DNA of 64,000 nucleotides from the sequence record MK250021.1, one strand, 5' to 3'. The translations under genes were made by a program, and so were the position numbers. Below the pieces are notes generated by a model. It ran no database searches, was not told the DNA's origin, and worked only from the letters and a program-made list of their open reading frames with translations. Of this stretch, positions 41,363 to 64,000 are shown piece by piece; position 1 is the stretch's first letter, and each line of letters starts with the position of its first letter.

Positions 41363-41644
41363 TTAAATAGAATAATTAATATTCATAATATCAAAAAGTT
41401 GATTAAGATGATCTGTTGTTTGAACTTCTACAGATGCAACAGTATTATGTTCATCATTATCAATAATACATGTCCAATTTCTTCCTACCATATTTGTTTG
41501 TAAATTATGAATAGTTATTGTAAATGTATGATTAAGTTCTCCTACAGTTTTATAAAAGTAATCTGCTTCATCAAAATCTGCAAAACCTTTATCATGATTA
41601 TATTCAAATTTATGAAATAAAAGTAAATCCTTTGTAATATCCAT
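41363..41644 (-). CDS. Hypothetical protein
   Basis: Intact ORF in a tightly packed operon. Confidence 0.7.
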   Translation of the reverse strand: MDITKDLLLFHKFEYNHDKGFADFDEADYFYKTVGELNHTFTITIHNLQTNMVGRNWTCIIDNDEHNTVASVEVQTTDHLNQLFDIMNINYSI

Positions 41645-41654
41645 GTTTAATTAT

Positions 41655-42509
41655 TTAATCTTCATCATTTAAATCCTCAAATTCTTCATATGATAATAGT
41701 AATTTATCATATTCTTTAATCATTGTAGATAAAATTTGTTTTTGCTCTGATACATACTGTTTATCAAAATGCCAACATTGTCCTGCATATTTACATGGAA
41801 TAAACATACCGTTTTGACTTTCTAACATTATACAGAATGATGCCCAATTTACAACTGATTCTGAAAGTTCTTTCCAATTTATAGTTGAATTATTATAAAA
41901 ACTCATAACACCATTCATTTGAGAAAATTGATTCCAACAATAATTATATGGCATATAGTCTCTATATTCATCACTATTTAAATCTGTGACAACAAATAGT
42001 ATACCTCCAGTAAATTCATTAAATACATTATCGCCTACACCAATCAATTCCAAACATTTCTTCATCTTTGGAATTTCATATGTCATTGCTTTATATATAG
42101 AATATTTCTCATATATAACAGTATATTCATATTTTTCTGAAGTATGAAATACTGAACACATTTTTGTTATATTTTCAAAAAGTGTTTTAATATTATCTTT
42201 TTGTTCTTCATATGAAACATATTTATTATAATCTCTTAATATTGTATATATAATATCATTAAATTTCATATGTAATTTCCCTTCTATCATTCGTGTAGTT
42301 TCATCCTCTTCATATTCAAAATCATCACTACCTCCATACTCATCCATATATCCTATAACAGGAATATGCATAGGTATTAATGGACTTTCTAAATAAGTAG
42401 GATTATTTCCAAGTTTATGCTTATTTCTACGACAAATAATAGCAATTACTTTCTCTCTATTCCTTATTGGAATTCTTGAATGAAATCCAGATACGCAAAA
42501 ATCACCCAT
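41655..42509 (-). CDS. Hypothetical protein (284 aa)
   Basis: Intact ORF, operon spacing. Confidence 0.75.
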   Translation of the reverse strand: MGDFCVSGFHSRIPIRNREKVIAIICRRNKHKLGNNPTYLESPLIPMHIPVIGYMDEYGGSDDFEYEEDETTRMIEGKLHMKFNDIIYTILRDYNKYVSYEEQKDNIKTLFENITKMCSVFHTSEKYEYTVIYEKYSIYKAMTYEIPKMKKCLELIGVGDNVFNEFTGGILFVVTDLNSDEYRDYMPYNYCWNQFSQMNGVMSFYNNSTINWKELSESVVNWASFCIMLESQNGMFIPCKYAGQCWHFDKQYVSEQKQILSTMIKEYDKLLLSYEEFEDLNDED

Positions 42510-42512
42510 AAC

Positions 42513-42998
42513 TTATTTTAAATTATTAATATAATCAGCCATCTTAGTTTTCCAATTGTTTGCCTTTGCAATATGACAAATATAGTTAACTGCATACTCA
42601 AAACAATTTTCTAATGTATTCCATGTCATATCAAATGAATGTGGATTTTCACCAAGAGTTTGTGCAAACTTACTTGAATATATAATATCAAAATACCAAT
42701 CTTTATGCTCTCTATTATATCCAGGCTCGATAATAATACCAAGATGTTTTTCTAACCAATCAACTGCTTCAAATACAGTAGGTGCTGGAATCCAATTAGG
42801 CGACGGATATTCAACTTCCCATTCTTTATCGCGTTGACACAGATCTCCAGTATGCCATGTACGTTCAGCAACAGTTTCACCATTCTTTGATTTAACACCT
42901 TTAATACCAATTGGTGTATTCATATACAAATCTTCTGTATATTCATCGAATCCTAATTTATTAAGAATTTGTGAAGATGCAAAATTAATATGTTTCAT
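42513..42998 (-). CDS. Hypothetical phage protein (161 aa)
   Basis: Intact ORF directly below promoter 43022-43055. LxxLGFDE...APT...W pattern. Confidence 0.75.
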   Translation of the reverse strand: MKHINFASSQILNKLGFDEYTEDLYMNTPIGIKGVKSKNGETVAERTWHTGDLCQRDKEWEVEYPSPNWIPAPTVFEAVDWLEKHLGIIIEPGYNREHKDWYFDIIYSSKFAQTLGENPHSFDMTWNTLENCFEYAVNYICHIAKANNWKTKMADYINNLK

Positions 42999-43021
42999 AA
43001 TTATTTTATTTTATATTACAT

Positions 43022-43055
43022 TACAAAGATACATATAATTTTGGAATATAAAAAA
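43022..43055 (-). promoter_or_regulatory. Bacteroidota sigmaA-type (early) promoter, -7 TAnnTTTG
   Basis: T-run...ATGTATCTTTGTA on the - strand; one of six near-identical copies. Confidence 0.75.
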
Positions 43056-43057
43056 TA

Positions 43058-43495
43058 TTACTTATCTTTTTCTTCTGCATCTACATATTTCCAATACTGT
43101 TCTATTATCTTATTCCATAATAATTCATATGAAAACCCATAATTATTATCAGGTCCAAATACTTTCATTTCATTTGAAGTAACCACATAATTGATTTGAT
43201 ATTTTCCCCTTTTTATTTTAAAAAAATTATCTTCATTTAATTCGTCTGAACCAGTATAACTAAATATTCTAATATTATAATGTTTACTTGATGTTATATG
43301 AACGCATGCATATAAATATGGTTGATAGTTTATTTTATATACATAATATGTATTTTCACAAATTTTATTAAATAGCCATTGTATACATTGTACATCACAA
43401 AAATCCGGTATTTCTTTATTAAATGGTGGAAATACAATATTTTCATCCATTACAGGCTTATCTTTTTTCTTAAATATGTTATTAAACAGTTTCAT
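43058..43495 (-). CDS. Hypothetical protein (145 aa)
   Basis: Intact ORF. Confidence 0.7.
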   Translation of the reverse strand: MKLFNNIFKKKDKPVMDENIVFPPFNKEIPDFCDVQCIQWLFNKICENTYYVYKINYQPYLYACVHITSSKHYNIRIFSYTGSDELNEDNFFKIKRGKYQINYVVTSNEMKVFGPDNNYGFSYELLWNKIIEQYWKYVDAEEKDK

Positions 43496-43498
43496 TAT

Positions 43499-44167
43499 TC
43501 AATCTTTAATAATTTTTAAATCATCTGGTATATAACAATCACTACCTAAATATTTAATATATTCTTTAACTGGTTTCTTTACTTTTTTCCAATATAGTAA
43601 GTTATTATCTTTGCTTTGATAATATATATAACTATCAAAATATGTTATTTCTTCAATATTTCCATTATGTTCAACTTTACATACTTTATAATTATCTTCA
43701 TCGAAATAACTTGCAAGATCCATCCATACTAATAAATCTTCTAATATCATTATTGACAACGGTGAAGTGTTATATGTATTAGTTTTTTTCTTTTCATATA
43801 TAATATTTCCATTATTATCTTTCAATACTGTTAATCCTTTATAATCACCTGTAATTTGCCAATTTGGATTATCAATAAAATATTGTAATAAAAATTCTAA
43901 TGGTTTTCGCTCGTCTTGGTTTATAGAATAATCTATTGAAAAATTATATTCACTAAACCTTAAATTATCTTCTATACATTGTCGTATGTCTATAGCAAAA
44001 TGTTGCTTCTAATCATGTGTTAATGTATAATATTCATATTTAGCAATATTTAATGCATGTTGATGTGCGGCTATTGTATGTCTACCAATTGCATATCTAT
44101 ATGACATCCATACTAAATCTTCATGATAACTTTTATCAAATATATTATCCTAATCTTTTTTCTTCAT
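43499..44167 (-). CDS. Hypothetical phage protein (222 aa; WMSYRYAIGRHT motif)
   Basis: The track ORF (TTG 43825) extends in frame through 2 TAG to ATG 44167. Confidence 0.7.
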
Positions 44168-44223
44168 ATAAAATAAAAAAGTCTATTTATAATTATATAA
44201 AAATATACATAAGTTGTTTATTA

Positions 44224-44230
44224 ATAAATA
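44224..44230 (+). promoter_or_regulatory. Putative late promoter ATAAATA
   Basis: 26 nt upstream of ATG 44257. Confidence 0.4.
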
Positions 44231-44256
44231 TAATAAATAAAAATAAACTAATTATC

Positions 44257-45160
44257 ATGAAATTCATTAAATTATTTGATAATAAAGAATAGTTAGATAA
44301 TTATGCCAATGGAATTTCACATCGAGATGGTGCATTTATACTATCTGAAAAAAAAAAAAGAGAAACTAAGTATTATTGATGAAAGACATCCAGGTCCAAA
44401 CTGTATTTATGTATAGGATTTAAATATGTCTCCATTATCATTAGAATCAAATTCGTCGAAAGATGTAAAAGTTGGCTCAATATTATATGTAAACACTAAT
44501 AATAAGTTAACATTAAATAATGAACCTGGTAATATGGCAATTGCTATATGTGTATGTCCATCAGTTACAGAAGATTTTGAAGCTGGTAATTCAACAGGTG
44601 AAAGTAAAGTAAAAACTGCACGTTTTTGTAGTCTTTACTATATGAATTAGGATATAGTAGGTACTGCTAGTATTAATGATACAACAGTATAGTTTAATAT
44701 GAAAGGATATACTATAGGAAATACATATGGTAATAGATCTAGTACTAGTTATATTGGTGGTAAAAAAAATACATAGATATTAGTAGAAAAATCATCATAT
44801 TATTATGATACTAAAAGATTATTATGTAATATATCATTTTCTAATATTTATAATGGTGTTTTTCTTGGCTGTAATGCTGCAGTTTCTGCTGCTGTATATA
44901 GTATACGTGGTACAAAAAGAGGTGATTGGTATTTACCATCAGTGGGAGAATTAAAAGAGATGTATAGTAAAATTTCCATAATCAATCCTATTAGAAAACA
45001 ACTAGTTAATGAAGAATACAAAATGTAGGGGCATTATTGGACAAGTTATGAATATAATGCAGACAATGAATCTGCAATATTATTCACCAATGGTGCTATA
45101 ACATATGCTGATAAAAAAATGAGTAAAAGAGTAATACCATTTTTAGCAGTTTCTATATAA
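44257..45160 (+). CDS. DUF1566/C-type-lectin-fold protein, frameshifted in an A12 tract (300 aa if A11)
   Basis: The MKFIKLFDNKE(TAG)LDNY... frame hits TGA at 44377. The frame after A12 (44348-44359) stays open with 5 TAG to TAA 45158 and contains GDWYLPSVGEL...HYWTSYEY...VIPFLAV. Confidence 0.7.
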
Positions 45161-45165
45161 AATAT

Positions 45166-45200
45166 TAAGGTGATAATATTTTTGAAATATTATCACCTTA
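45166..45200. terminator. Bidirectional intrinsic terminator
   Basis: 16-bp perfect stem TAAGGTGATAATATTT/AAATATTATCACCTTA. Confidence 0.85.
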
Positions 45201-45206
45201 TTTAAT

Positions 45207-45887
45207 TTACTTCTTATATAAAATATTATCAATCATTCCTTTAGAACCATATGATTTTGCTTCTTCTGCTGTCATCCAAAAATCTCTATCTGCATCAGAT
45301 TTAATTTTTTTCATTGTTTGCCCAGAATGATTTGCAATAATATCATAAAGTTCTGTTTTTAACTTATTTATTTCTTTACATGTAATTTCTATATCACTTG
45401 CTTGGGTATGATCTCCAGTAGATGACATAGGTTGGTGAATCATTACACGTGAATGTGGTAATGCGTATCTCTTTCCTTCAGTTCCTGCACAAAGTAATAT
45501 ACTAGCCATACTAGCTGCCATACCGGCACATATAGTAGATACATCAGACCTTATAAATTGCATTGTATCATATATCTCTAATCCTGAATATACATCACCA
45601 CCTGGTGAATTAATATAAATAGAAATATCAGTATTATCTACATTATCAAGATATAATAATTGAGATGTAATAATATTAGCACTTTCTGCTGTTACAGGAT
45701 TACCTAAGAAAATAATTCTATCCATCATCAATCTTGAGAATACATCCATTTGTGATACGTTAAGTTGTCGTTCCTCAAGTATAGTAGGATTTTGATAACC
45801 CATATTTATACCATTCATATAATCATGTAAGTAAAGACTACTTACATTTCTTGAATTCATAAACTTTTCAAAATCAGTTTTAATCAT
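45207..45887 (-). CDS. clpP: ATP-dependent Clp protease proteolytic subunit (Bacteroidota-type)
   Basis: EERQLNVSQMDVFSRLMMDRIIFLG, YINSPGG, GMAASMA (Ser), MIHQP (His), DRDFWM (Asp). Confidence 0.95.
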   Translation of the reverse strand: MIKTDFEKFMNSRNVSSLYLHDYMNGINMGYQNPTILEERQLNVSQMDVFSRLMMDRIIFLGNPVTAESANIITSQLLYLDNVDNTDISIYINSPGGDVYSGLEIYDTMQFIRSDVSTICAGMAASMASILLCAGTEGKRYALPHSRVMIHQPMSSTGDHTQASDIEITCKEINKLKTELYDIIANHSGQTMKKIKSDADRDFWMTAEEAKSYGSKGMIDNILYKK

Positions 45888-46380
45888 CTATATTATAGTA
45901 TTTCTTTCTAAAACATTTTTTTAGTAATGATACAACATGAATATTAGGAAATTCACAAGGATTATTAGGATTTGTTTCATTATAAATATCGGGATAACAA
46001 TCTAATATAAATTTAACAACTCCTTGAGATCTAGATACTCCAGCTGAACAATGAACATAAATATCTTTTCCTAAATTATTCTCTATAAAATTAAATAATT
46101 CATTTGCTTGATTATCTGTTAATCCTTTAATTGAATTTGCATATTTAATTTCATCTTCTGTTATATCATCTCCATATGCATATAATAAATTATAATCTGT
46201 AATATCATAAAAGTCTAAATTAATAACATTATCTCTTGATTTAAATATATGATATTCATCTTTTGCATTTGGTTCACATATAGATATTATTGCTATATTA
46301 TCTGGTAATGTATTGTTATCCCATTTATTTTTATTCATTAACGATTTAAATCCGTCAAATCCTGTACACCAAATTTTCAT
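45880..46380 (-). CDS. Cys-based protein tyrosine/dual-specificity phosphatase-like protein
   Basis: P-loop VHCSAGVSRS (HCxxGxxR). Confidence 0.8.
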   Translation of the reverse strand: MKIWCTGFDGFKSLMNKNKWDNNTLPDNIAIISICEPNAKDEYHIFKSRDNVINLDFYDITDYNLLYAYGDDITEDEIKYANSIKGLTDNQANELFNFIENNLGKDIYVHCSAGVSRSQGVVKFILDCYPDIYNETNPNNPCEFPNIHVVSLLKKCFRKKYYNIDD

Positions 46381-47015
46381 AATTTACTTAATTGAATTTC
46401 TAATTCATGTATATGTGATAATTCTTTATCTATCTCATCATTTAAATAATCTATTCTATCTTGTGATTTTTTAATTAAACGTTTAAGTTCATCTGATAAT
46501 ATATTATTTTCATCAAAATAATTTGAAATAATTTTTTTAATATTATCTATTCCGTTAACAAATGTTTTAAATTCATCATCTGTTAATTTAAAAGAAATTT
46601 GATTATTTAAATTATAAACATATATTTTTTCTTTTAATGATTTACATTCTTTTAAAAAGAGTTCTATATTTTCATCTATTATAAAATCTAAATCATAATC
46701 AGTAAATTTGACAAAAGTATTAATTTCAAAATTATCATACTTTGGATTAATAAATACGTCGTTAAATATATAATTTACATAATAGAATAAATCAACTCCA
46801 TAAATATCATGAAACGAATCTGTATGACATACTATAAAATCTCCTAATTTCATATTAGAAAAATATCCATAATCGAAATCAAATATTTTTATTGTTCTAT
46901 TTAATAAATCAATTGGTATATTATCTTTTAAAATTTTAGGAAAATCATTTTCATCAGGACATTCTAATAATTTATGAATATCCTGATATATGTTTTTTAA
47001 TTTCTCATATTCCAT
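46377..47015 (-). CDS. Hypothetical protein (212 aa)
   Basis: Intact ORF, ATGA overlap with the next gene. Confidence 0.7.
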   Translation of the reverse strand: MEYEKLKNIYQDIHKLLECPDENDFPKILKDNIPIDLLNRTIKIFDFDYGYFSNMKLGDFIVCHTDSFHDIYGVDLFYYVNYIFNDVFINPKYDNFEINTFVKFTDYDLDFIIDENIELFLKECKSLKEKIYVYNLNNQISFKLTDDEFKTFVNGIDNIKKIISNYFDENNILSDELKRLIKKSQDRIDYLNDEIDKELSHIHELEIQLSKL

Positions 47016-47017
47016 AT

Positions 47018-47707
47018 TTAAATAAACTTTTTAATATATTTTAATGTATCATGAATATCTTGAGAAAACTTAAACAATGCTTCCTTTGTTTTAAGATTAA
47101 TATCTTTATATAGTTGTTCTTTCGTTTCAAACCCTATAGCATCATCTGATTTCATCCATGATTTCTGTATAACTGCAGTATGCCTATTACTATCATTAAT
47201 AGTAATATTATCCCAATTATTACCATATATATTAATTTCTGTATATACAATAGTTACTCTATTATTAATAATATTTACATCTTCTAACATAATATAAGTA
47301 TCATTAATATTATAATCAAAACCACATGGTTCTACACCATATGTTATATCTTTATAAAAATCATTATCTACTTTTCGCATAACTTTACCAGTATCTAAAT
47401 AATTATGCTGAATAAAATCACGTAATTCAATATTATATTGAGATATAAAATTACCGCATGGACATTGTTCAGTCAAAAATATTTGCATATTATATGGTAA
47501 ATATCTAAAATCTTCATTATTAACATTTAAATAACGACGTTTTACTAATTTAAATGTATAATCAATATTATTGATATTAATAGTTACTTCTTCCTTTGCA
47601 CAAAAATCTTGATATGTATGCAACTTATTTAAAAGACGTTTAAATAATGTAGCAACTCTATCACAACCTAAATCATTTACTGAAATATCATATACTTCAA
47701 AATTCAT
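47018..47707 (-). CDS. Hypothetical protein (229 aa)
   Basis: Intact ORF below promoter 47742-47775. Confidence 0.7.
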   Translation of the reverse strand: MNFEVYDISVNDLGCDRVATLFKRLLNKLHTYQDFCAKEEVTININNIDYTFKLVKRRYLNVNNEDFRYLPYNMQIFLTEQCPCGNFISQYNIELRDFIQHNYLDTGKVMRKVDNDFYKDITYGVEPCGFDYNINDTYIMLEDVNIINNRVTIVYTEINIYGNNWDNITINDSNRHTAVIQKSWMKSDDAIGFETKEQLYKDINLKTKEALFKFSQDIHDTLKYIKKFI

Positions 47708-47741: not shown

Positions 47742-47775
47742 TACAAAGATACATAAAATTATTAAAAATAAAAAA
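47742..47775 (-). promoter_or_regulatory. Bacteroidota sigmaA-type (early) promoter
   Basis: ATGTATCTTTGTA with upstream T-run. Confidence 0.75.
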
Positions 47776-47825: not shown

Positions 47826-48032
47826 TTACTTTGATGACGAGCTAGATGATGATGGAAATAATAATTTAGCAACTGTCATCAAACACAATGCATGAATATA
47901 TGTAATTGTTGGTAAACCAAATAAATATGGCATAACATAATTCCAACAAATCATAAATATAATTGCACCTAAAATAATAAATATAATTGCAACTAAAATA
48001 GTTACAATTGATGTCCATATAAAAGTTTTCAT
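47826..48032 (-). CDS. Small membrane protein (two hydrophobic helices)
   Basis: 68 aa, strongly hydrophobic. Confidence 0.7.
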   Translation of the reverse strand: MKTFIWTSIVTILVAIIFIILGAIIFMICWNYVMPYLFGLPTITYIHALCLMTVAKLLFPSSSSSSSK

Positions 48033-48128: not shown

Positions 48129-48353
48129 TCATACTTCATTATTTCTATTATTATAATAATTAATCAAATCAACTTTCATTTCTTTATTAAATTGATTATT
48201 TCTTTTTCTATTTCTAATAACTCTATCTTCTGCTATTTCACAATTATAACGTTTCCATTTATTTAAAATAGAACGTCTATACTTTGGTTTAATTTTATCT
48301 TTATTATCATGCATATAATCATATACAGCTTGTTCTTTAAAATTATTACTCAT
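48129..48353 (-). CDS. Small basic hypothetical protein
   Basis: Intact ORF. Confidence 0.6.
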   Translation of the reverse strand: MSNNFKEQAVYDYMHDNKDKIKPKYRRSILNKWKRYNCEIAEDRVIRNRKRNNQFNKEMKVDLINYYNNRNNEV

Positions 48354-48390
48354 AGTATATTTTATAAAGATATTTTATTTTCAAAATAAT

Positions 48391-48460
48391 AAAAAATAAA
48401 CATCAAAATTGTGGTTCTAAATCTTACTGCTACTTACTAAGACTACAATTTTGATGTTTA
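48391..48460 (-). terminator. Intrinsic terminator closing ncRNA candidate A
   Basis: 16-bp stem TAAACATCAAAATTGT/ACAATTTTGATGTTTA followed by TTTTTT on the - strand. Confidence 0.75.
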
Positions 48461-49134
48461 TAAAAGCAATCATTCATTATCCTGCAGCATCCATATTAGT
48501 ATAAGTTTCATTGCAATAGAACTTTACAACTATAGTGATAATCCACTTATACATTCTTTTACTCTAAAGTCTTTTATATAACTTTATCATACATAATATA
48601 TGTACTGTCCATCAATAAAAGGTTCTTTATTTCATCATGGTTTTATATCGTATAAACAACCCTCTGTATATCACTGATTCATTTCTTTACATTTAGAAAT
48701 CAGGGTCTTTAAGCCTCAACGTTTGGCTGTAACTATTATCCTCAACCATTACCAGATAATGTCATCTTGTTTTTGTGGTGCATCTCACATACCTCCTTTA
48801 ATCATAAAACAAGCAAAACTACTAAGACAAATAACGTTTCTTAGAACTTCTACGAATTTACGCTCATATCAAATCATCATCTGATATAGACACCTAAATT
48901 AAGTGAATAAAGTTTACGACTCAATATAAAATTTTATATCTCAACCTTTATCAAAAACGATTCATTAAATTCTTTTAAGGAACTTATTTCTAATTAAATG
49001 AAGGATTCATTTAAAATAGGTTCTCCCGAAAACATGCGGTTTATCCTTACTCATTATAATTATAATAAGCGTTGTTTATAGCACTCATTAGAATTCATTA
49101 TGTATTATCTAACTCTCATTTATAATATTCATAA

Positions 49135-49163
49135 TTTATATGATATTAAAAGCAAAATGTCTA
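49135..49163 (-). promoter_or_regulatory. Possible second, sigma70-type promoter TAGACA-N17-TATAAA
   Basis: Same 17-nt architecture as 38750, 54852 and 54968; lies inside a hairpin. Confidence 0.35.
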
Positions 49164-49241
49164 ATATCATATTATAAATTATTTGTCTCGTTAGATATTA
49201 TCAAAATTTCAAAGATCTCTTCATTGTTATTTTATTAACAA

Positions 49242-49275
49242 TACAAAGATACACATTCTTTTTTAATAAAAAAAA
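49242..49275 (-). promoter_or_regulatory. Bacteroidota sigmaA-type (early) promoter
   Basis: GTGTATCTTTGTA with upstream T-run; points into the ORF-free region A. Confidence 0.7.
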
Positions 49276-49303: not shown

Positions 49304-50104
49304 TTATCTTACAAAACATGTTGCATATCCATGTTCAACCTTAATAAATAATACTTCACCATTTAACCACAATTTATCAAATGGCGTTTTATCACCATTT
49401 TCTTGCATATCTTTATGTTCATCAATAGCATATTTCTCAATGTCATCAATACTACCTTTATAATAATTCTTTATGTTATCAGATTCAAGATATGCAATTC
49501 GCGACTTACATTCGTCAAGAAGTTCTTCAAATACAGGAACAGATTTATTACAAAATCTGTCATACTCATTCTGAAAATTAATATTAGATGAACAAATACC
49601 ATTTGTAATAATACGAGATACATTTTCAAGTTTCTCTAGATTATCAAGGTCTACATAAAAATCATCGCATGTAATATCATTATCTTTATACATACCAATA
49701 ACATGAACTTTTGCATTCCATAATTCACACCATTTATTTGCACCATCTTCTATAAGCTGTCCAAAATCATTATCATGAAAATCAAACATAATCATGAAAT
49801 TTTTATCAACCTTAATATCACTAGTTTCATATGGATCACCTTTATACTTATGACCATCATAAAGACCTGTAAGATATGAAGAACGACTTATCCTTAAAAT
49901 CTCTTTCAAACAAAAATCCTTAATTTTTTTATATTCTTCATCATTTAGATTATCAGTTCCATCAAGCAAATCTAATACTGAGTCATAATATTTTTCTTCA
50001 TTTTTTACATAGTCATAAGACATATCTACAAATGGCTTGCCGAACATACGAATTTCAGATTTATTCATATCTTCTTGCATCTTCTTAAGATCTATTTCTT
50101 TCAT
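49304..50104 (-). CDS. Hypothetical protein (266 aa)
   Basis: Intact ORF. Confidence 0.75.
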   Translation of the reverse strand: MKEIDLKKMQEDMNKSEIRMFGKPFVDMSYDYVKNEEKYYDSVLDLLDGTDNLNDEEYKKIKDFCLKEILRISRSSYLTGLYDGHKYKGDPYETSDIKVDKNFMIMFDFHDNDFGQLIEDGANKWCELWNAKVHVIGMYKDNDITCDDFYVDLDNLEKLENVSRIITNGICSSNINFQNEYDRFCNKSVPVFEELLDECKSRIAYLESDNIKNYYKGSIDDIEKYAIDEHKDMQENGDKTPFDKLWLNGEVLFIKVEHGYATCFVR

Positions 50105-50117: not shown

Positions 50118-51059
50118 TTACATTGTTCCATCATTAGGTTGCAAACACATAATTCCACGTTCTCGCCACATCTTAACCACTTTAGAAGAATCTTCCAATA
50201 CAAACAATACATTATAATAAGGTTCAATATATTCCTTATATAAATTATATTTACAATCTGGACCCTTTGTAAAATTCTTCAAAGGTCTCATTAACACCTT
50301 ATCAACATTACCAATAAGGTTATTCTTCAACCAATCTTCTGTTGCATGTCTAATATCGTCTGTATCTTCTCTACCTGTCAATATAATGACATCCACTGAT
50401 TTATCGGCAATATATGTATTAACAAGTTGGCAAAGTTGCTTACATGGTTTATCATCCCTCATGCTATCAGCAGCACCATTACCATAAAATGGCCGACCTT
50501 GAAGATTAAAACAAAGTGTAGCATCCATATCTACAAGAATACAATTCTTCTTCGTTTCATCAAACTTCTTAAAGCTATTATATTGCTTATTATTAAGTTG
50601 TGTAGCAATAAAGTTTCTATATCGCCTATAAGTAGATTTGATAACGGATTCACCTATAGGATTAGATCTAAATGAATCTCTTCTAATACATTCCTCTACC
50701 GATACATCAAAGAAATCCTTAAATTCCAATGTATAATGATACTCATTATGTGTCTCATTATACTTATCAATTCTATCTTGCATTTCTTTCCATCCCTTTG
50801 GATTCAGGTTCATATTATCCATAATGATATTCCAACCTTTTTCCATAGGTGATTTAAAAAATGCATCTGTCATATCTTTAATAACAGAAAGTTTCTCACG
50901 TGATTCTACCCAATACTCACCGAACATGTTTCTAAGAGAATCCCAATTAATTCTAATTCTCTCAGTTGGTTTCTCCTTTACCCAATGTTCAGCGAATGTA
51001 GACTTACCAGACGCTTGAATACCTCTTGTCAATATAATTACCCTTTCTTTCATATTCAT
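50118..51059 (-). CDS. pseT: Polynucleotide 5'-kinase/3'-phosphatase (T4 PseT-like)
   Basis: P-loop GIQASGKST, RINWDSLR; HAD motifs LVDMDATL, LTGR, RP...D...K, LEDS. Confidence 0.9.
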   Translation of the reverse strand: MNMKERVIILTRGIQASGKSTFAEHWVKEKPTERIRINWDSLRNMFGEYWVESREKLSVIKDMTDAFFKSPMEKGWNIIMDNMNLNPKGWKEMQDRIDKYNETHNEYHYTLEFKDFFDVSVEECIRRDSFRSNPIGESVIKSTYRRYRNFIATQLNNKQYNSFKKFDETKKNCILVDMDATLCFNLQGRPFYGNGAADSMRDDKPCKQLCQLVNTYIADKSVDVIILTGREDTDDIRHATEDWLKNNLIGNVDKVLMRPLKNFTKGPDCKYNLYKEYIEPYYNVLFVLEDSSKVVKMWRERGIMCLQPNDGTM

Positions 51060-51077: not shown

Positions 51078-51111
51078 TACAAAGATACATAATTTTTAGG
51101 AAAATAAAAAA
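51078..51111 (-). promoter_or_regulatory. Bacteroidota sigmaA-type (early) promoter
   Basis: ATGTATCTTTGTA just upstream of pseT. Confidence 0.75.
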
Positions 51112-51451: not shown

Positions 51452-52147
51452 TTATTTAGATTTTAATCCTAAACAATATTCTTTATTAATATTATCAATA
51501 AAAGAATTAATTCTAATTCTTAGTAATTCTGATTCTTCTTCAAATTCCTTAATTTTATCAATGTCTTTTTTAATATCATCTATATTATGATTTAACAAAT
51601 ATTCATACGTATTAGGTTTAGATACTTTAAAATAATAAATATCTTCATTCATAATATTATTATGATTTAAAGCACATAATAAATGATAAGATTCCTCATT
51701 TGCAGATGAACCATGATAACCATATCCATCACTTTCAAAATATATACATAATGGTCCATAACTATAATGTCCACCTGGATATACAGTTGTTCTTAATGAG
51801 TTAATATGAAATGATTTACATATATTATATTTCTTATCTAAATAATCATTCAATAACTTATTAATACTCATCATTTGAAGATCTAATAATCTATCTAAAT
51901 TTATATCATTATTCTTACTTATATATACACTGGAAACTTCTTTTACAACTGAATCAATATCTAATTCATAATTCTCGTCTGTATATAAATGAAGAATACA
52001 AAGAAATAATCTATGTATATATTCTTTCTTATCGTAATTTATATATGCAGTTTTTAATTTTTCTACATAATCATCTGTCACCTTCTTATTGATGTTATAT
52101 TCGATATTCTTTATAAATTCTTTTTGCTCATTCTATGTCATAATCAT
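51452..52147 (-). CDS. Hypothetical protein (231 aa)
   Basis: The track GTG start extends through one TAG (codon 5) to ATG 52147, which forms an ATGA overlap with the upstream stop. Confidence 0.7.
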
Positions 52148-53007: not shown

Positions 53008-53331
53008 ATGGGAGGTTTTGTTTATTTAATTTGCGATCCTGAATAGAATTGTTATAAAATAGGTGTAACAAGGAATATAGCATAGAATAGATTAAAGTAG
53101 TTATAGACTGGTAACTCATCAAAATTACATATGGTTTCAAATATATATTGTGAATATCCTTTTAGACTTGAAACAATGTTACATAATAAATTCAATCATA
53201 AACGTGCAAATGGTGAATGGTTCTATTTAGAATAGGAAGATATAAGTAATTTTAAAACTATATGTGAAGAAACAATATAGATGATTAATGTAATGAAAGA
53301 TAATCCATTCTTTAGTAAAGATTTAAAATGA
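53008..53331 (+). CDS. GIY-YIG-superfamily T5orf172/MUG113-like protein (107 aa), absent from track
   Basis: With TAG=Gln: GFVYLI...YKIGVT...RLKQLQTGN...E..LH..F...R.NGEWF; 6 in-frame TAG; TGA stop then terminator. Confidence 0.8.
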
Positions 53332-53376
53332 ATAAAGGTGATATAAGAATAATAAAACTTATATCACCTTTATTTT
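53331..53376. terminator. Bidirectional intrinsic terminator
   Basis: 17-bp stem AATAAAGGTGATATAAG/CTTATATCACCTTTATT between convergent genes. Confidence 0.85.
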
Positions 53377-53706: not shown

Positions 53707-53749
53707 ATAAAAAATGAGTTATTAGACTTATGCACAATCTAATAACTCA
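53707..53749 (-). terminator. Intrinsic terminator closing ncRNA candidate B
   Basis: 12-bp stem TGAGTTATTAGA/TCTAATAACTCA plus T-run on the - strand. Confidence 0.75.
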
Positions 53750-54815: not shown

Positions 54816-54823
54816 TTATACTT

Positions 54824-54852
54824 ATTATATAATCAATAATTTAAAAAGTCTA
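54824..54852 (-). promoter_or_regulatory. Sigma70-type promoter TAGACT-N17-TATAAT
   Basis: Exact 17-nt spacing; points into region B. Confidence 0.6.
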
Positions 54853-54939
54853 TATTTTAATAGATATATTTCAAAATTTTTATTGTTAACTGTTATTAAA
54901 AATATTAAATATTAAAATCTTTTTAAACTTGATTCTAAA

Positions 54940-54968
54940 TTTATATATTAAATTAAATAGAAAGTCTA
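54940..54968 (-). promoter_or_regulatory. Sigma70-type promoter TAGACT-N17-TATAAA
   Basis: Tandem copy 116 nt upstream of the previous one. Confidence 0.55.
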
Positions 54969-54994
54969 TATTTCAATACAATATTTTTAAAAAA

Positions 54995-55171
54995 TTATTT
55001 TAAACAATATTCTAAATCAAATATAAAGTCTCCTAATAGTTCAATCTTTTTCCTAATAAGTTCTGATTCTAAATCAAATTTATGATCTATACAAAAATTT
55101 AATTCAATATATAACTTATCTCTATTAGATTTCCATTTATCTATTAATTCTTTCTTTGTTAATTTTTCCAT
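54995..55171 (-). CDS. Small hypothetical protein (58 aa), absent from track
   Basis: MEKLTKEELIDKW...; ATG lies 1 nt from the upstream stop. Confidence 0.55.
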   Translation of the reverse strand: MEKLTKKELIDKWKSNRDKLYIELNFCIDHKFDLESELIRKKIELLGDFIFDLEYCLK

Positions 55172-56437: not shown

Positions 56438-56871
56438 NNNNNNNNNNNNNNNNNNNNNNNNNNNNNNNNNNNNNNNNNNNNNNNNNNNNNNNNNNNNNNN
56501 NNNNNNNNNNNNNNNNNNNNNNNNNNNNNNNNNNNNNNNNNNNNNNNNNNNNNNNNNNNNNNNNNNNNNNNNNNNNNNNNNNNNNNNNNNNNNNNNNNNN
56601 NNNNNNNNNNNNNNNNNNNNNNNNNNNNNNNNNNNNNNNNNNNNNNNNNNNNNNNNNNNNNNNNNNNNNNNNNNNNNNNNNNNNNNNNNNNNNNNNNNNN
56701 NNNNNNNNNNNNNNNNNNNNNNNNNNNNNNNNNNNNNNNNNNNNNNNNNNNNNNNNNNNNNNNNNNNNNNNNNNNNNNNNNNNNNNNNNNNNNNNNNNNN
56801 NNNNNNNNNNNNNNNNNNNNNNNNNNNNNNNNNNNNNNNNNNNNNNNNNNNNNNNNNNNNNNNNNNNNNNN
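56438..56871. other. Assembly gap (434 N)
   Basis: Run of N. Confidence 1.
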
Positions 56872-57612: not shown

Positions 57613-57629
57613 TATTTACTTATATTATT

Positions 57630-57938: not shown

Positions 57939-57948
57939 ATATTTAAAA

Positions 57949-58743: not shown

Positions 58744-58775
58744 TTTTTACTAATAATTAAAATGTTAAATATATT

Positions 58776-59333: not shown

Positions 59334-59402
59334 ATTTTCTTATTTTGTTAAAATAATATAAACATTTTTAGTATATTTTAATATAATAATTGTTAACTGT
59401 TA

Positions 59403-60092: not shown

Positions 60093-60120
60093 TATCTATT
60101 GTTTTTTAATTATTCATTAT

Positions 60121-60155
60121 TACAAAGATACATAAATTATATGTAAAATAAAAAA
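60121..60155 (-). promoter_or_regulatory. Bacteroidota sigmaA-type (early) promoter
   Basis: ATGTATCTTTGTA with upstream T-run. Confidence 0.75.
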
Positions 60156-60206
60156 GTCTGACTAAATATTTCTATTTAATCAGACATTATTAACAATATT
60201 TAATTT

Positions 60207-61373
60207 TTATGCATATAAATATATTTTTTTCATTTCTTTACCAGAAGGTGTTGTAAATGTTATAACTGCATATTTTCTTTCAAATCCATCCCATTCGCAT
60301 TCCATATCTTCACCTCTGCCATTATAACGGTCCGCATCATCAAGGTCTCGTTTTAAATCAAGCTTTGCTTTCCAATTAGGCTTCTTTGTTGATTGAATTG
60401 ATTTTTTATATTCAATACATTTTTTTGAATTATGTGCAAGCAATCTTAAATCAAACCTATCAAATATGCGAGATCGTTTTCCTGACACTCTTTCATCTGA
60501 AATATCCATTATATCTAATGGTTTACATTTCAATGTATTCTGAATATATTTATTCAATGATAGGAATTCTTTACATGGTTTAGAAATATACTTAATGGAA
60601 TCAACCCATGGTTTATCATCATTATTACTTAGCCAACTACTATATGGTTTATGAATACCATCAATACGTGTGTAGTTAGGTAAATCTATTTTATACAATT
60701 TATATGTATAAATATCTTCCATTAATCCATCAATATCACCATTTGGATAATATTTTTCTAATATATTTTCATTATCATAATAAAAATTATTAATATTAAT
60801 ATCGATAATAGGAAACTTTTCAGTTTTTTTATTTGCTATATATTTCTTTAATAGTTTTGAAATAACTTCTTGCTTATTATTTGATGATGATGAAGTATTT
60901 CTTGAAGATGATGTACCTCTTAATGTTCCAGATAATACACGTTCACTTGCATTTACACCAAACTCTTGTAATGTAATATTTGAACCAATAAGTTTATTAA
61001 TCCATCTAACAATTTCATTCGCTGATATAGGATTTACTCTAAATACTTTTGTAAATGCTTCTATTGTAGCATCTGTACGCTTTGGTATTTTTGCTTCTGT
61101 TTCACCTACAAATGTATAAATCAATTTTGGATTTCCAAAAGACATAAGCTTACATTTTCTTCCTTGTTTAATAATACGAAGAACATAAGATTGATTTGTT
61201 GGTGTATATACCATATACAAATAATATACAGGATAACCTGTGGTTCCATTTGATTTTAATTTTACAAGATTACATCTATAATATGCTCCATCAGCAGAAG
61301 CAATATTTTCAAATGCAAATTTAACTGCTTGCTTTTCTGTTGTATCTAAAGATTCAAATAATTTATTAATCAT
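60207..61373 (-). CDS. Hypothetical two-domain protein (388 aa) with Ser-rich linker
   Basis: Intact ORF; TATAAATA ~34 nt upstream. Confidence 0.75.
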   Translation of the reverse strand: MINKLFESLDTTEKQAVKFAFENIASADGAYYRCNLVKLKSNGTTGYPVYYLYMVYTPTNQSYVLRIIKQGRKCKLMSFGNPKLIYTFVGETEAKIPKRTDATIEAFTKVFRVNPISANEIVRWINKLIGSNITLQEFGVNASERVLSGTLRGTSSSRNTSSSSNNKQEVISKLLKKYIANKKTEKFPIIDININNFYYDNENILEKYYPNGDIDGLMEDIYTYKLYKIDLPNYTRIDGIHKPYSSWLSNNDDKPWVDSIKYISKPCKEFLSLNKYIQNTLKCKPLDIMDISDERVSGKRSRIFDRFDLRLLAHNSKKCIEYKKSIQSTKKPNWKAKLDLKRDLDDADRYNGRGEDMECEWDGFERKYAVITFTTPSGKEMKKIYLYA

Positions 61374-61424
61374 TATATTATTAAAATTATTTAAGTTTAA
61401 TATAATATATTTATATCTAATTAA

Positions 61425-62585
61425 TTACCATCTATGATAACGTTTTCTATATGAATAATTACCAGATGGATTATTTTCTGTATAATCATTTGTAATTACC
61501 CAATATGAAATTCCAACATTATATAGTAACATAATAATAAGAATAGCAATATACCATCCTGTACTTAATTCTATATTAATATAATTAAAATCAGAAAATT
61601 CTTTCCTATTCCAATTTGTATCAATTTGTGTATCTAACCATTCAGCATATTCTTTAAAATTAATGGTAGGATGATTAATGAAATAATCACGTGTTTTTAC
61701 TTCAAGCAAAGGTTTATCACACCATGAAAATGGATTACACCAAATAATTTTATTATTCTTTATACCAAGACATACAATAAACTCGTTCTTATTTCCACCT
61801 TGCCAATATGCCTTTTGCATTTCTGATATTTCTATGTTAGATGTATTGTAACAACATATCAATACATGAATTTGATTCTTTGGACCTCTGTAGCCATTCA
61901 AATACCTAACAGCGTCAATATCAGATTCATTTGCGTTATATCCAATTATTGGATTCTGATCATATAACTTAGTTTCAGGATATTCATATAAACCATTTTC
62001 TTTTGCATCTTCTTTACTTATATTAGAATATTTAAAGATAGAATATGAAGATGCTTTTACTTTATTCTGATACATATGTGTCCATGTTACAGGATATGAA
62101 TTCTCTCTTGTTCTATTCCAATATGTAATATATGCATCTCCATCTTCTAAATGATAATTTCTATGCATATCTTTAAATACTGGTTGCGTATTTAATTTTT
62201 TACATATATACTGATAATCTTTTTTAGATATTGATTCTTTATCTCCATGTATTGTTTCATAAATATATTCAGCAGGATGGTATCTTCGTTCAGGTACTGT
62301 ATATGTTACGGTTCGTGTTTTACCGTTACCACATGAAACAGTTCTAGTATGTGTTACCATAACTATTTCATCCCATGGTTCATAATATGTTACTTTACTT
62401 ATTAAATCACTTAAATATTCTGTGTCTAATGATGATATATATACAAATGAATATTTAAGGCCAAGAAATAATAATAATGATGGTACAGCTACAATAAAAT
62501 ATTCCCATATTGCAGTTTGCTTACGAAATTTCCATGCTAATATTATTATTGTAATAATAGGTATTAAAAAAATTATTATTTCCAT
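61425..62585 (-). CDS. Membrane-anchored protein (N- and C-terminal TM helices, 386 aa)
   Basis: Two N-terminal hydrophobic helices, a soluble core and a C-terminal helix. Confidence 0.75.
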   Translation of the reverse strand: MEIIIFLIPIITIIILAWKFRKQTAIWEYFIVAVPSLLLFLGLKYSFVYISSLDTEYLSDLISKVTYYEPWDEIVMVTHTRTVSCGNGKTRTVTYTVPERRYHPAEYIYETIHGDKESISKKDYQYICKKLNTQPVFKDMHRNYHLEDGDAYITYWNRTRENSYPVTWTHMYQNKVKASSYSIFKYSNISKEDAKENGLYEYPETKLYDQNPIIGYNANESDIDAVRYLNGYRGPKNQIHVLICCYNTSNIEISEMQKAYWQGGNKNEFIVCLGIKNNKIIWCNPFSWCDKPLLEVKTRDYFINHPTINFKEYAEWLDTQIDTNWNRKEFSDFNYINIELSTGWYIAILIIMLLYNVGISYWVITNDYTENNPSGNYSYRKRYHRW

Positions 62586-62619
62586 ATATTATTATTTTAT
62601 TTAAAATTAAAAATTATGT

Positions 62620-62654
62620 TACAAAGATACATATAATTTATAAAATAAAAAATC
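62620..62654 (-). promoter_or_regulatory. Bacteroidota sigmaA-type (early) promoter
   Basis: ATGTATCTTTGTA with upstream T-run. Confidence 0.75.
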
Positions 62655-62703
62655 TTATAGATAAAAACTAATTTACCTATAAGATTTAAATAAGTGTTGT
62701 TAT

Positions 62704-63237
62704 TTAATAGATTCTTTTAAAGTTTTCATAAAAATCTTTCGCATGCTTTACAAAATACGGACCATCAGGACAATCATTATATACTGCTTTATATAAAACT
62801 AAATCTTCATTTTTTCTCCAGTAATAATTTGGGTGTTCTAAATATTCATCATCAAAATATTCAGGATCTAAATCAATATCTTTAAATAATAGATGTTCTT
62901 GAACTAATTCATATTCTCTATGTTCAAAATCTTTTGCATTTTTATAGATATATCTTCCAATACCTTTATTCTCTATATTCCATTCTGTTTGATACCAATA
63001 TTCACTTAAGCTTCTATCATGTTCATCAGGAAATTTATCTTGATTCATATATTCCTTATTAACATGAAGATAATGAAACGTATCTTGAACATATCCACCA
63101 AACCAACAAATTCCTAATATAAGTTCTTTTTGTGTATCATGAATTTCGACAACTCTCATACCTTGAGTCATTTTAGGAAATTCTTTACAACAATGAAATA
63201 TATAATCTCCTTCTTTTATATCTTTTAGCTTTTTCAT
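62704..63237 (-). CDS. Hypothetical protein, C-terminus DUF1653-like
   Basis: EDLVLYKAVY...YFVK..KDF resembles the DUF1653 LVVYRALY..WVRP..MF pattern. Confidence 0.45.
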   Translation of the reverse strand: MKKLKDIKEGDYIFHCCKEFPKMTQGMRVVEIHDTQKELILGICWFGGYVQDTFHYLHVNKEYMNQDKFPDEHDRSLSEYWYQTEWNIENKGIGRYIYKNAKDFEHREYELVQEHLLFKDIDLDPEYFDDEYLEHPNYYWRKNEDLVLYKAVYNDCPDGPYFVKHAKDFYENFKRIY

Positions 63238-63548
63238 TTCTTTCTAATTAAGTTTTTAATTGTATAAAAATATAAAAATTTAGTTTATTAAATATTGTTA
63301 ATTAAAATATTTTTATTAATTTTTTCCCCAATATTATTATGGTATTTTTTAATATAATAATTAAAATTATTATTTTTAACTATGAATGAAACTAATGTGA
63401 AAGAACCTAAACGTATAAAGCAATATATAGATACACATATATGGTTAAGTTTTTGTAAATTATTAAAAGCTTATGTTTTAATAAGTAATAATTTATATAT
63501 TTATTTGCTTTATAAAAATTAAAATTTTATGAACGCATACATAAATTG

Positions 63549-64000
63549 TTATTTGTTTGTAATATTAAATAATAATTCTACTTCTTCTAATAAACTTACT
63601 TTATTTTCTTCTATTATTTTCTTTGAATATGATAATTTCATATTCTTCCATGTTTCTAATAGAAACTTTATATGTTCTGCTAAGAATTTATTCCAATCAT
63701 GAATTCTCATCTCGTCTTTCAAACCACATGCACATTGTGTGAAATAATCAGATGAAAATGAAACTAATATATCACATTCTCTTAATATCCGTTGATATAA
63801 ATTTAAATCATCATCATTAATCATATAAGGATAACATGTTGCATCTATATTATCTCCTATAATTTTAATCAAATGATTACATGATTCATCATTAATAAAT
63901 TCAGTTCTAATATAATTCTTCATTACATCTTTTGCGATATTGATATTTGTAATATCATCATATTTTCCTGCGCTATGATTAAAATCATGAAATATTGCAG
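63549..64000 (-). CDS. HD-domain phosphohydrolase-like protein (5'-truncated by window edge)
   Basis: The frame is open to the window end: AIFHDFNHS...ATCYPY...RECD. Confidence 0.65.
   Translation of the reverse strand, partial: AIFHDFNHSAGKYDDITNINIAKDVMKNYIRTEFINDESCNHLIKIIGDNIDATCYPYMINDDDLNLYQRILRECDILVSFSSDYFTQCACGLKDEMRIHDWNKFLAEHIKFLLETWKNMKLSYSKKIIEENKVSLLEEVELLFNITNK

What the first reader, a model, noticed from the sequence alone, without database searches (positions are those of the whole stretch)
41363..64000. Promoter class and TAG usage partition the window into temporal programmes
Genes directly below the six host-type TAnnTTTG promoters (42998, 47707, pseT, 60092, 62585 and their operons) are TAG-free. 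TAG-containing genes follow ATAAATA, and two TAG-rich genes (44257, 53008) sit antisense as isolated, terminator-bounded islands within the early region. This gives sequence-level support for the model that early genes are readable by the host code and late genes need phage recoding machinery. The model is published for recoded phages; the link to promoter class is read here.
Basis: partly seen in the sequence, partly recalled or inferred. Interest (0 to 1): 0.65.

Follow-up and report, generated by a model that had tools for sequence, protein, structure and literature searches.

The report
Two promoter classes track amber-codon use
In this 550-kb gut megaphage (Prevotella phage Lak-B2), genes behind a host-style promoter never contain the reassigned stop codon TAG. 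Genes behind a T4-late-style promoter use TAG for about a third of their glutamines, so gene timing and the genetic-code switch appear to be wired together.

Summary
The window is Prevotella phage Lak-B2 (MK250021.1, positions 434001-498000), a TAG-to-Gln recoded megaphage.

- **Host-type promoters.** Six copies of TGTATCTTTG lie on the minus strand in 41363-64000, against 0.22 expected by chance. Every operon below them is TAG-free.
- **Test outside the window.**

| Genes headed by | TAG-free genes | TAG / (TAG+CAA+CAG) |
|---|---|---|
| host-type cassette | 38 of 40 | 2/172 |
| ATAAATA 25-45 nt before the start | 29 of 105 | 492/1312 |

  Fisher p = 2.6e-14. The two TAGs in the first group are terminal codons, so they act as stops.
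- **Replication.** 300 kb of Lak-C1 gives p = 1.7e-8. Both motifs are kept at orthologous genes (14/16 and 49/53).
- **What each class contains.** Host-type units hold RF2, a sigma-70-family factor and tRNA arrays. The large terminase (21 TAGs) has ATAAATA.
- **Likely reader of ATAAATA.** The genome encodes a T4 gp55-like late sigma. It carries three conserved in-frame TAGs.

Limits: no timing data exist. About 70% of genes have neither motif directly upstream. One of the two "islands" lacks a canonical ATAAATA. Neither motif was found before the suppressor tRNA. The recoding model is published; the promoter link was not found in the literature searched.

The parts
43024..43033 (-). E (host-type) promoter -7 box TGTATCTTTG. 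It heads the operon 42513-42998, 41655-42509, 41363-41644, all TAG-free.
47744..47753 (-). E promoter with an upstream hairpin and T-run. It heads 47018-47707, 46377-47015, 45880-46380 (DSP-type phosphatase) and 45207-45887 (ClpP), all TAG-free.
49244..49253 (-). E promoter followed by about 900 nt without an ORF (48354-49243), then two small TAG-free ORFs (48129-48353, 47826-48032).
51080..51089 (-). E promoter heading 50118-51059 (polynucleotide kinase-phosphatase, pseT-like) and 49304-50104, both TAG-free.
60123..60132 (-). E promoter with a hairpin and T-run. It heads a run of TAG-free minus-strand ORFs from 60092 down to 54995. The run is interrupted by the N gap, so continuity of the transcription unit is unproven.
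62622..62631 (-). E promoter with a hairpin and T-run, heading 61425-62585 and 60207-61373, both TAG-free.
44224..44239 (+). Two overlapping L motifs (ATAAATA), 33 and 24 nt before the ATG at 44257.
44257..45160 (+). Island 1: a DUF1566/Lcl_C-like gene with 6 TAG and 1 CAA. The reading frame changes at the A12 run 44349-44360. The gene is absent from Lak-C1, and a paralogue elsewhere in the genome is a single ORF behind its own ATAAATA.
44184..44190 (-). L motif 23 nt before 43499-44167 (2 internal TAGs), which is followed by 43058-43495 (TAG-free).
45166..45200 (.). Two-way hairpin terminator (16 bp stem) between island 1 and the ClpP operon.
53008..53331 (+). Island 2: a GIY-YIG/T5orf172 homing-endonuclease-like gene in which all 6 Gln codons are TAG. 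5 of the 6 TAGs are kept in Lak-C1. There is no canonical ATAAATA upstream.
53335..53372 (.). Two-way hairpin followed by a T-run after island 2. It is conserved in Lak-C1. It was read from the sequence; its 10-nt loop is too long for the scan tool to report it.
41014..41020 (+). L motif 34 nt before 41048-41314 (1 internal TAG). That gene is followed by the two-way terminator 41317-41350.
61408..61414 (-). Exception: ATAAATA 41 nt before the TAG-free gene 60207-61373 (7 Gln codons; P(TAG-free) = 0.04 at the late-class rate).
51452..52147 (-). Exception: a gene in an otherwise TAG-free operon that has no E cassette of its own. Its TAG is codon 5 and aligns with TAT (Tyr) in Lak-C1.
56438..56871 (.). 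Masked or gap stretch of 434 N. The flanks are collinear with the deposited record and no called ORF enters it. Its content was not examined.

Best explanation
Lak-B2 appears to run a two-layer temporal programme. The evidence for the pattern is direct; the timing and the factors that read each promoter are inferred.

**Layer 1: two discrete promoter classes.**
- **Class E.** About 56-60 near-identical cassettes: a T-run, then about 14 nt, then TGTATCTTTGTA, lying 27-61 nt before the start codon. The core fits the Bacteroidota sigma-A -7 box TAnnTTTG. A T-run sits where the -33 TTTG element would be. In about 40% of copies that T-run is also the U-tract of a perfect upstream terminator hairpin. 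The unmodified host RNA polymerase holoenzyme could therefore read these promoters on entry (inferred).
- **Class L.** (A)ATAAATA, with its first base 30-40 nt before the start codon and no conserved upstream element. This is almost the T4 late promoter TATAAATA. The genome encodes a T4 gp55-like sigma that could read it (inferred).

**Layer 2: codon usage.**
- E-headed genes never contain an internal TAG, so the host's standard code translates them. Two of them end in TAG.
- L-headed genes use TAG for about 36% of Gln codons. They need the phage suppressor tRNA-CUA and relief from RF1.

**How the two layers connect.**
- E units encode RF2, a sigma-70-family factor and the tRNA arrays. The early set therefore supplies tRNA arrays, RF2 and a sigma factor, apart from the suppressor tRNA, whose promoter I could not find.
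- The gp55-like sigma carries three conserved TAGs. The code switch may therefore have to come before late transcription (inferred).

**The two islands.** Both are late or selfish genes (a DUF1566-like protein and a GIY-YIG nuclease) set antisense among E operons. A two-way terminator on the 3' side and dense TAG use insulate them.
For: **Shown directly.**
- Identity of the window.
- TAG recoding raises the total length of ORFs of at least 100 codons (all six frames) from 49.7 to 72.5 kb. The genome has a tRNA-CUA and a TAG-free RF2.
- E cassette: 6 copies in the window against 0.22 expected. There are 56 in the genome, and the position-weight-matrix scores are bimodal with nothing in between.
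- ATAAATA peaks 30-40 nt before 70 of 214 TAG-containing genes, against 19 of 377 TAG-free genes. Overall it is depleted twofold in the window: 67 found, 132 expected.
- Independent test outside the window: p = 7e-10 with the literal motifs and 2.6e-14 with the refined ones. By transcription unit the TAG share is 0.053 against 0.342. A gene-level Mann-Whitney test gives 4.5e-10.
- 45 of 45 E head genes have no internal TAG.
- Per-gene TAG share is bimodal: 148 genes at zero and a broad peak at 0.4-0.6.
- Replication in Lak-C1. Motifs are kept at orthologues: E 14/16, L 49/53.
- Hairpins lie upstream of E sites.
- The terminase, with 21 TAGs, is an L head.
- Sigma genes.
- The gp55-like protein matches phrog_234 at E = 4e-11. 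T4 gp55 itself matches the same family at 3e-69. Pairwise BLASTP gives 3e-7, and the only PDB hit is gp55 chain 7d7c_F.
- Its 3 TAGs and 98% identity are kept in Lak-C1.

**From the literature.**
- TAnnTTTG is the sigma-A -7 box (PMC9723704).
- The T4 late promoter and gp55 (PMC2988020, PMC7892883).
Against: - There is no transcript, transcription-start or timing evidence. No RNA run holds this phage.
- 427 of 591 genes have neither motif directly upstream. 120 genes without an internal TAG fall in naively assigned L units, and 30 L heads are TAG-free where 12 are expected. The classes therefore do not exhaust the genome, and a third (middle) class is likely.
- No E or L motif precedes the suppressor tRNA.
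- Island 2 lacks a canonical L motif.
- The -33 G of the host consensus is not conserved in the E cassette.
- The gp55-like protein lacks the C-terminal third of gp55.
- The ATAAATA before the gp55-like gene in Lak-B2 is not kept in Lak-C1.
- Genes were called with my own ORF caller, and 24 of the 51 single-TAG genes look like start over-calls.
Confidence: 0.7

Rival explanations
1. The link is real but reflects expression level or translation cost rather than timing. E cassettes would be strong, constitutively used promoters, and their genes would avoid TAG because suppression is inefficient. ATAAATA genes would tolerate TAG.
For: - The E cassettes are near-identical strong-consensus sites, and they also drive tRNA arrays and ORF-free stretches.
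Against: - The terminase and the giant ORFs, which are needed in bulk, use TAG heavily.
- The absence of TAG in E heads is absolute, not graded.
- Two E-head genes use TAG as their last codon, which fits a standard-code setting.
Confidence: 0.12
2. The E cassette is mainly a mobile terminator-promoter module, like the PeSL elements of T4-type phages. It would shuffle in genes acquired from standard-code sources, so the lack of TAG would be inherited ancestry rather than regulation.
For: - About 40% of E sites are hairpin-plus-promoter composites, and the cassette with its leader is repeated almost verbatim.
- The region does show gene gain or loss between Lak lineages: island 1 is absent from Lak-C1.
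Against: - E units and their motifs are kept between Lak-B2 and Lak-C1 (14/16 orthologous heads).
- They hold core functions: RF2 at 92% and sigma at 86% amino-acid identity.
- The one indel examined (island 1) is an L-type gene, not an E cassette insertion.
- A TAG-free state kept over this divergence implies selection.
Confidence: 0.1
3. The pattern is an artefact of AT-rich sequence, of gene calling, or of motifs tuned on the same data.
For: - ATAAATA is a short AT-only word in a 74% AT genome.
- The 25-45 nt position window was chosen after looking at the whole genome.
- The ORF caller is home-made.
Against:
- ATAAATA is depleted overall yet piles up at one distance from start codons.
- The result replicates in a second species-level genome, and the motifs are conserved at orthologues.
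Confidence: 0.02

Closest known systems
Stop-codon recoding as a regulator of late or lytic genes in phages (Ivanova 2014; Devoto 2019 for Lak; Borges et al. 2021 preprint / 2022)
   Same: - TAG is read as Gln.
- The genome has a suppressor tRNA-CUA and RF2.
- Structural genes are recoded and part of the genome stays compatible with the standard code.
- A homing endonuclease set among early genes is heavily recoded; Borges et al. describe this for Agate phages.
   Different: - Those papers define early and late by gene function and by TAG maps. The word "promoter" does not occur in the Borges preprint, in Devoto's preprint, in Crisci 2021 or in the Lak taxonomy paper.
- Here the partition is tied to two discrete promoter motifs, and to a late sigma that itself needs suppression.
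Phage T4 temporal transcription: early sigma-70 promoters and late TATAAATA promoters read by gp55
   Same: - Early promoters are host-consensus.
- The late promoter is a single 8-bp AT box with no -35 element, and differs from the Lak motif by one base.
- A gp55 homologue is present.
   Different: - The Lak motif is AATAAATA rather than TATAAATA.
- The Lak protein has 128 aa and aligns only to residues 3-106 of gp55, so it lacks the C-terminal third of gp55 (which, from my recollection, includes the clamp-binding tail). gp33 and the clamp were not sought.
- The host is a Bacteroidota species.
- The Lak sigma gene contains in-frame TAGs.
PeSL (promoter-early stem-loop) cassettes of T4-type phages (PMC2839356, PMC4122927)
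   Same: Composite terminator hairpin plus early promoter, repeated many times with high similarity ahead of small early genes.
   Different: - Only about 21-24 of the 56 E sites have the hairpin.
- A role in recombination or shuffling was not tested here.
- The sequence is unrelated, being a Bacteroidota-type -7 box.
Bacteroidota sigma-A promoters (-33 TTTG / -7 TAnnTTTG)
   Same: - The -7 box TATCTTTG fits TAnnTTTG exactly.
- A T-rich element lies about 23 nt upstream, at the position of the -33 element.
   Different: - The -33 G is not conserved.
- The flanks (TG before the box, TA after it) are conserved beyond the host consensus, so the cassette is a phage-specific, very uniform version.

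Membership tests
Bacteroidota sigma-A-type promoter | -7 box TAnnTTTG | tested here: met
   TATCTTTG is invariant in 56 cassettes. There are 6 in the window against 0.22 expected.
Bacteroidota sigma-A-type promoter | -33 element TTTG about 19-21 nt upstream of the -7 box | tested here: inconclusive
   A conserved T-run occupies that position, but the G is not conserved.
Bacteroidota sigma-A-type promoter | Transcription by host sigma-A holoenzyme starting just downstream of the box | not testable with these tools
   No RNA runs are available. This needs transcription-start mapping or in vitro transcription.
T4-type late promoter / gp55 system | Single AT-rich -10-type box (TATAAATA) with no -35 element | tested here: met
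   (A)ATAAATA lies at a fixed 30-40 nt before start codons, and no information is found upstream of it. It differs from the T4 box by one base.
T4-type late promoter / gp55 system | gp55-family sigma encoded by the phage | tested here: met
   Genome 405724-406110 matches phrog_234 at E = 4e-11. T4 gp55 matches the same family at 3e-69. BLASTP against gp55 gives 3e-7, and the only PDB hit is 7d7c_F.
T4-type late promoter / gp55 system | C-terminal sliding-clamp-binding tail of gp55, with gp33 and gp45 as co-activators | tested here: not met
   The Lak protein ends at 128 aa and aligns to residues 3-106 of the 185-aa gp55. gp33 and the clamp were not sought.
TAG-to-Gln recoded phage (code 15 style) with early genes in the standard code | In-frame TAG in conserved genes, together with a suppressor tRNA-CUA and RF2 | tested here: met
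   The terminase has 21 TAGs. tRNA-CUA. RF2. Five of six TAGs are kept in the GIY-YIG orthologue.
TAG-to-Gln recoded phage (code 15 style) with early genes in the standard code | A discrete set of genes free of TAG | tested here: met
   Per-gene TAG share is bimodal, with 148 of the genes that have at least 5 Gln codons at zero. E heads: 45 of 45.
TAG-to-Gln recoded phage (code 15 style) with early genes in the standard code | TAG-free genes are expressed before TAG-containing ones | not testable with these tools
   No time-resolved data are available.
PeSL-like terminator-promoter cassette | Stem-loop terminator directly fused to an early promoter and repeated across the genome | tested here: met
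   Mean folding energy is -8.6 against -4.2 kcal/mol for shuffles (p = 3e-6). About 21-24 of the 56 sites have perfect 10-18 bp stems ending at the T-run.
PeSL-like terminator-promoter cassette | Cassettes mark the boundaries of indels between related genomes | not tested
   Only one indel (island 1) was examined. It is bounded by a terminator hairpin, not by an E cassette.

The most novel reading that the evidence does not exclude
The genetic-code switch may sit upstream of the transcriptional switch. The gp55-like late sigma of Lak phages carries three in-frame TAG codons, and these are conserved between Lak-B2 and Lak-C1. Late (AATAAATA) transcription could then begin only once amber suppression is working. 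This would make stop-codon reassignment a translational checkpoint that licenses a sigma cascade, with host-type terminator-promoter cassettes supplying RF2, tRNA arrays and an early sigma.
Probability: 0.35. Interest if true: 0.8.

Novelty: new variant of a known kind. Interest (0 to 1): 0.6.

Why it matters
The idea that recoded phages read early genes with the host code and late genes with their own code has rested on gene function and TAG maps. Lak phages are uncultivated, so timing cannot yet be measured.

Two sharply defined promoter motifs that predict TAG use gene by gene give a sequence-only way to assign the roughly 600 genes, most of them unannotated, to a programme. They also give concrete DNA elements and a candidate sigma to test in Bacteroides or Prevotella. 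Finally, they suggest a specific order of events: host polymerase first, then RF2 and an early sigma factor (E units) plus the suppressor tRNA, whose promoter class is unknown, then the amber-dependent late sigma, and last the virion genes.

The same test can be applied to other recoded phage clades.

Tried and rejected
- **Whole genome of the window.** It is not held. I rebuilt the genome from the public record outside the window and left the gap as N.
- **Rfam on 41000-64000.** No hits at E <= 0.1, so the two ORF-free stretches remain unnamed. ARAGORN finds no tRNA in the window.
- **E. coli-type sigma-70 promoter scan.** 152 sites found against 159 expected, so it is uninformative for this host.
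- **Third promoter motif.** I looked for one before TAG-free genes that lack the E cassette. No clear k-mer stood out.
- **Weaker E-like sites, including before the suppressor tRNA.** None found; the scores are bimodal.
- **"Isolated TAG genes are extra TAG-rich".** Rejected genome-wide: 0.393 against 0.430, p = 0.42.
- **Functions of the four giant TAG-rich ORFs.** Only one weak tape-measure-like PHROG hit. Most E-unit proteins have no family.
- **Tail sheath Pfam model.** No match.
- **RNA evidence.** Only DNA contig runs hold the sequence.
- **An L promoter for the gp55-like gene.** The ATAAATA seen in Lak-B2 sits in a hairpin loop and is not kept in Lak-C1, so I dropped that claim.

Full report
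**What the window is.** Megablast places window 41000-64000 on Prevotella phage Lak-B2 (MK250021.1, 549,839 bp, baboon faeces) at 475000-498000, at 100% identity and with the same length. The window is therefore record 434001-498000.
- The DNA is 26% G+C.
- Reading TAG as sense raises the total length of ORFs of at least 100 codons (all six frames) from 49.7 to 72.5 kb. Giant ORFs with 14-42 in-frame TAGs then appear in the left half.
- Lak phages are the published TAG-to-Gln megaphages.

**The gap.** The 434 N (56438-56871) occupy exactly the length of the record between two collinear flanks. No frame on either strand is open for more than 13 codons at either edge. No called gene crosses the gap, and the frames on its two sides are independent genes. 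A small gene, a promoter or a terminator inside it cannot be excluded, so the unit running from 60092 down to 54995 is not proven continuous. I did not read those letters in any copy. The record was fetched only outside the window, and the Lak-C1 pieces I fetched avoid the homologous stretch.

**Checking the observation.** TGTATCTTTG occurs six times, all on the minus strand, against 0.22 expected.
- Five copies lie 28-44 nt before the starts at 42998, 47707, 51059, 60092 and 62585. The sixth (49244-49253) is followed by about 900 nt without an ORF.
Other identifiable products are ClpP, a DSP-type phosphatase and a DUF488 protein.
- The 29 TAG-free minus-strand genes in the range hold 110 Gln codons with no TAG. 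At the late-class rate this has P = 4e-22.

Four genes in the range contain TAG.
- 43499-44167 has 2 TAGs and ATAAATA at -23.
- 44257-45160 has 6 TAGs and ATAAATA at -33 and -24.
- 53008-53331 has 6 TAGs and only ATAAATG at -24.
- 51452-52147 has 1 TAG, at codon 5, aligned with TAT in Lak-C1.

One TAG-free gene (60207-61373) follows an ATAAATA at -41.

**The two islands.**
- *Island 1* is a DUF1566/Lcl_C-like protein. It has a paralogue at genome 119232-120140 behind its own ATAAATA. It is missing from Lak-C1 and is closed by the two-way hairpin 45166-45200.
- *Island 2* is a GIY-YIG/T5orf172 gene (Pfam E = 1e-17). All its glutamines are TAG, and five of the six are kept in Lak-C1. It is closed by a conserved two-way hairpin at 53335-53372.

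I assembled the genome from the record plus the window. I called 591 genes under TAG = sense with a codon-usage-scored ORF picker.

*E motif.* It is a discrete family of 56 copies with the consensus T-run, about 14 nt, then TGTATCTTTGTA. The copies lie 27-61 nt before a start codon or ahead of tRNA arrays. Position-weight-matrix scores are bimodal, with nothing in between.

*L motif.* ATAAATA is the top k-mer before TAG-containing unit heads. It peaks sharply 30-40 nt before their starts: 70 of 214 genes, against 19 of 377 TAG-free genes. Across the window as a whole it is twofold depleted, with 67 found and 132 expected.

| Motif definition | Host-type class | ATAAATA class | Fisher p |
|---|---|---|---|
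| Position-refined motifs | 38/40 TAG-free; TAG share 2/172 = 0.012 | 29/105 TAG-free; TAG share 492/1312 = 0.375 | 2.6e-14 |

- Both TAGs in the refined host-type class are the last or fourth-last codon, so they act as standard-code stops with a back-up stop just behind. All 45 E head genes in the genome lack an internal TAG.
- Propagated along operons, the TAG share is 0.053 in E units and 0.342 in L units.
- Per-gene TAG share is bimodal.
- In 300 kb of Lak-C1 (human, Bangladesh; about 78% nucleotide identity) the result repeats: 23/25 against 16/62 TAG-free, p = 1.7e-8.
- At orthologous head genes the motif is kept in 14/16 (E) and 49/53 (L) cases. The surrounding 80 nt are only 43-49% identical without gaps.

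**What the classes contain.**
- RF2 (genome 292737-293873) and a sigma-70-family gene (340823-341758; regions 2 and 4) are TAG-free and lie in E units. So do the tRNA arrays.
- The large terminase (21 TAGs) is an L head.
- A 128-aa protein at genome 405724-406110 belongs to the T4 gp55 family. It matches phrog_234 at E = 4e-11, and T4 gp55 itself matches that family at 3e-69. BLASTP against gp55 gives 3e-7, and the only PDB hit is 7d7c_F.
- That protein has three in-frame TAGs. It is 98% identical in Lak-C1, with the same TAGs.
- T4 late promoters are TATAAATA read by gp55 (PMC2988020), one base away from the Lak motif.
- TAnnTTTG is the -7 box of Bacteroidota sigma-A (PMC9723704).

**Mechanism proposed.**
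- *Shown:* two discrete motif classes, their fixed geometry, their conservation, their near-absolute link to TAG use, and the gene content of each class.
- *Inferred:* host sigma-A holoenzyme reads the E cassettes on entry. Their products need no recoding and include RF2 and a sigma factor; the same cassettes drive the tRNA arrays. The gp55-like sigma directs late AATAAATA transcription. Because that sigma needs amber suppression, the code switch may gate late transcription.
- About 40% of E cassettes are fused to a perfect upstream terminator hairpin, as in the PeSL cassettes of T4-type phages (PMC4122927).

**Limits.**
- No timing or transcription-start data exist. Only DNA contig runs hold this sequence.
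- 427 genes have neither motif directly upstream. Many TAG-free genes lie outside E units, and L heads include more TAG-free genes than chance predicts: 30 against 12. A middle class is likely, but I found no motif for it.
- The suppressor tRNA-CUA lies 23 nt after a TAG-rich GIY-YIG gene, with no E or L motif before it. The arrangement is kept in Lak-C1.
- Isolated TAG genes are not generally more TAG-rich than clustered ones.

**Novelty.** The early-standard, late-recoded model is published for Lak and other clades. In the papers I could search, "promoter" does not occur in the Lak papers or in the recoding preprint. No paper links promoter motifs to recoding. The library lacks most subscription journals, so this is absence in what was searched, not proof of absence.

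**Verdict.** The interpretation passes its own refutation test and a replication. The temporal meaning remains an inference.

Noticed in passing
window 44257-45160 (A-run 44349-44360): The island-1 gene changes frame at an A12 run. Its N-terminus is in the ATG-44257 frame and its body is in the +1 frame. Lak-B4 has A9, which leaves the same offset, while the paralogue at genome 119232-120140 is a single ORF. This could be transcriptional slippage, ribosomal frameshifting or a broken gene.
   Followed up: partly
window 48354-49243 (minus strand): A full E promoter (49244-49253) is followed by about 900 nt without an ORF, a tRNA or an Rfam match. The stretch ends near a hairpin and T-run at about 48400-48470, read by eye from the sequence. 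It is probably one of the expressed 'intergenic' RNAs that Devoto et al. mention.
   Followed up: partly
window 53757-54995: A second ORF-poor stretch with G+C up to 0.39 in a 26% G+C genome. It is closed by the terminator 53714-53750 on the minus strand, is conserved at about 78% in Lak-A and Lak-C, and has no Rfam hit.
   Followed up: partly
genome 414762-415619 (L009 in record coordinates): The suppressor tRNA-CUA lies 23 nt after a GIY-YIG gene that has 8 TAGs. The arrangement is kept in Lak-C1, with compensatory changes in the anticodon stem. All three GIY-YIG genes of the genome contain TAGs.
   Followed up: partly
whole window: ATAAATA is twofold depleted overall (67 found, 132 expected), as if stray late promoters were selected against.
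   Followed up: partly
genome 201773-202180 and 283723-284076: Two E-head genes have TAG as their last or fourth-last codon, with a TAA or TGA 1-4 codons later. TAG is apparently still used as a stop in the early set, with a back-up stop for after the code switch. The sigma gene 199451-200464 likewise has a TAG 9 codons before its TAA.
   Followed up: partly
window 51452-52147: A single TAG at codon 5 of a gene in an otherwise TAG-free operon. It aligns with TAT (Tyr) in Lak-C1, so it is a recent TAT-to-TAG change rather than a Gln codon.
   Followed up: yes
genome 510-523 kb: Matches to family-B DNA polymerase fall in three separate ORFs. The gene may be split or interrupted.
   Followed up: no
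window 3847-38318: Four giant TAG-rich ORFs of 2821, 1525, 2666 and 1989 aa. One has a weak tape-measure-like PHROG hit; the others have no family match.
   Followed up: partly
genome 346127-346199: A tRNA with anticodon UUA, which would read TAA, lies about 620 nt downstream of an E promoter. It is known from Crisci et al. 2021, and I saw no sign that TAA is reassigned.
   Followed up: no
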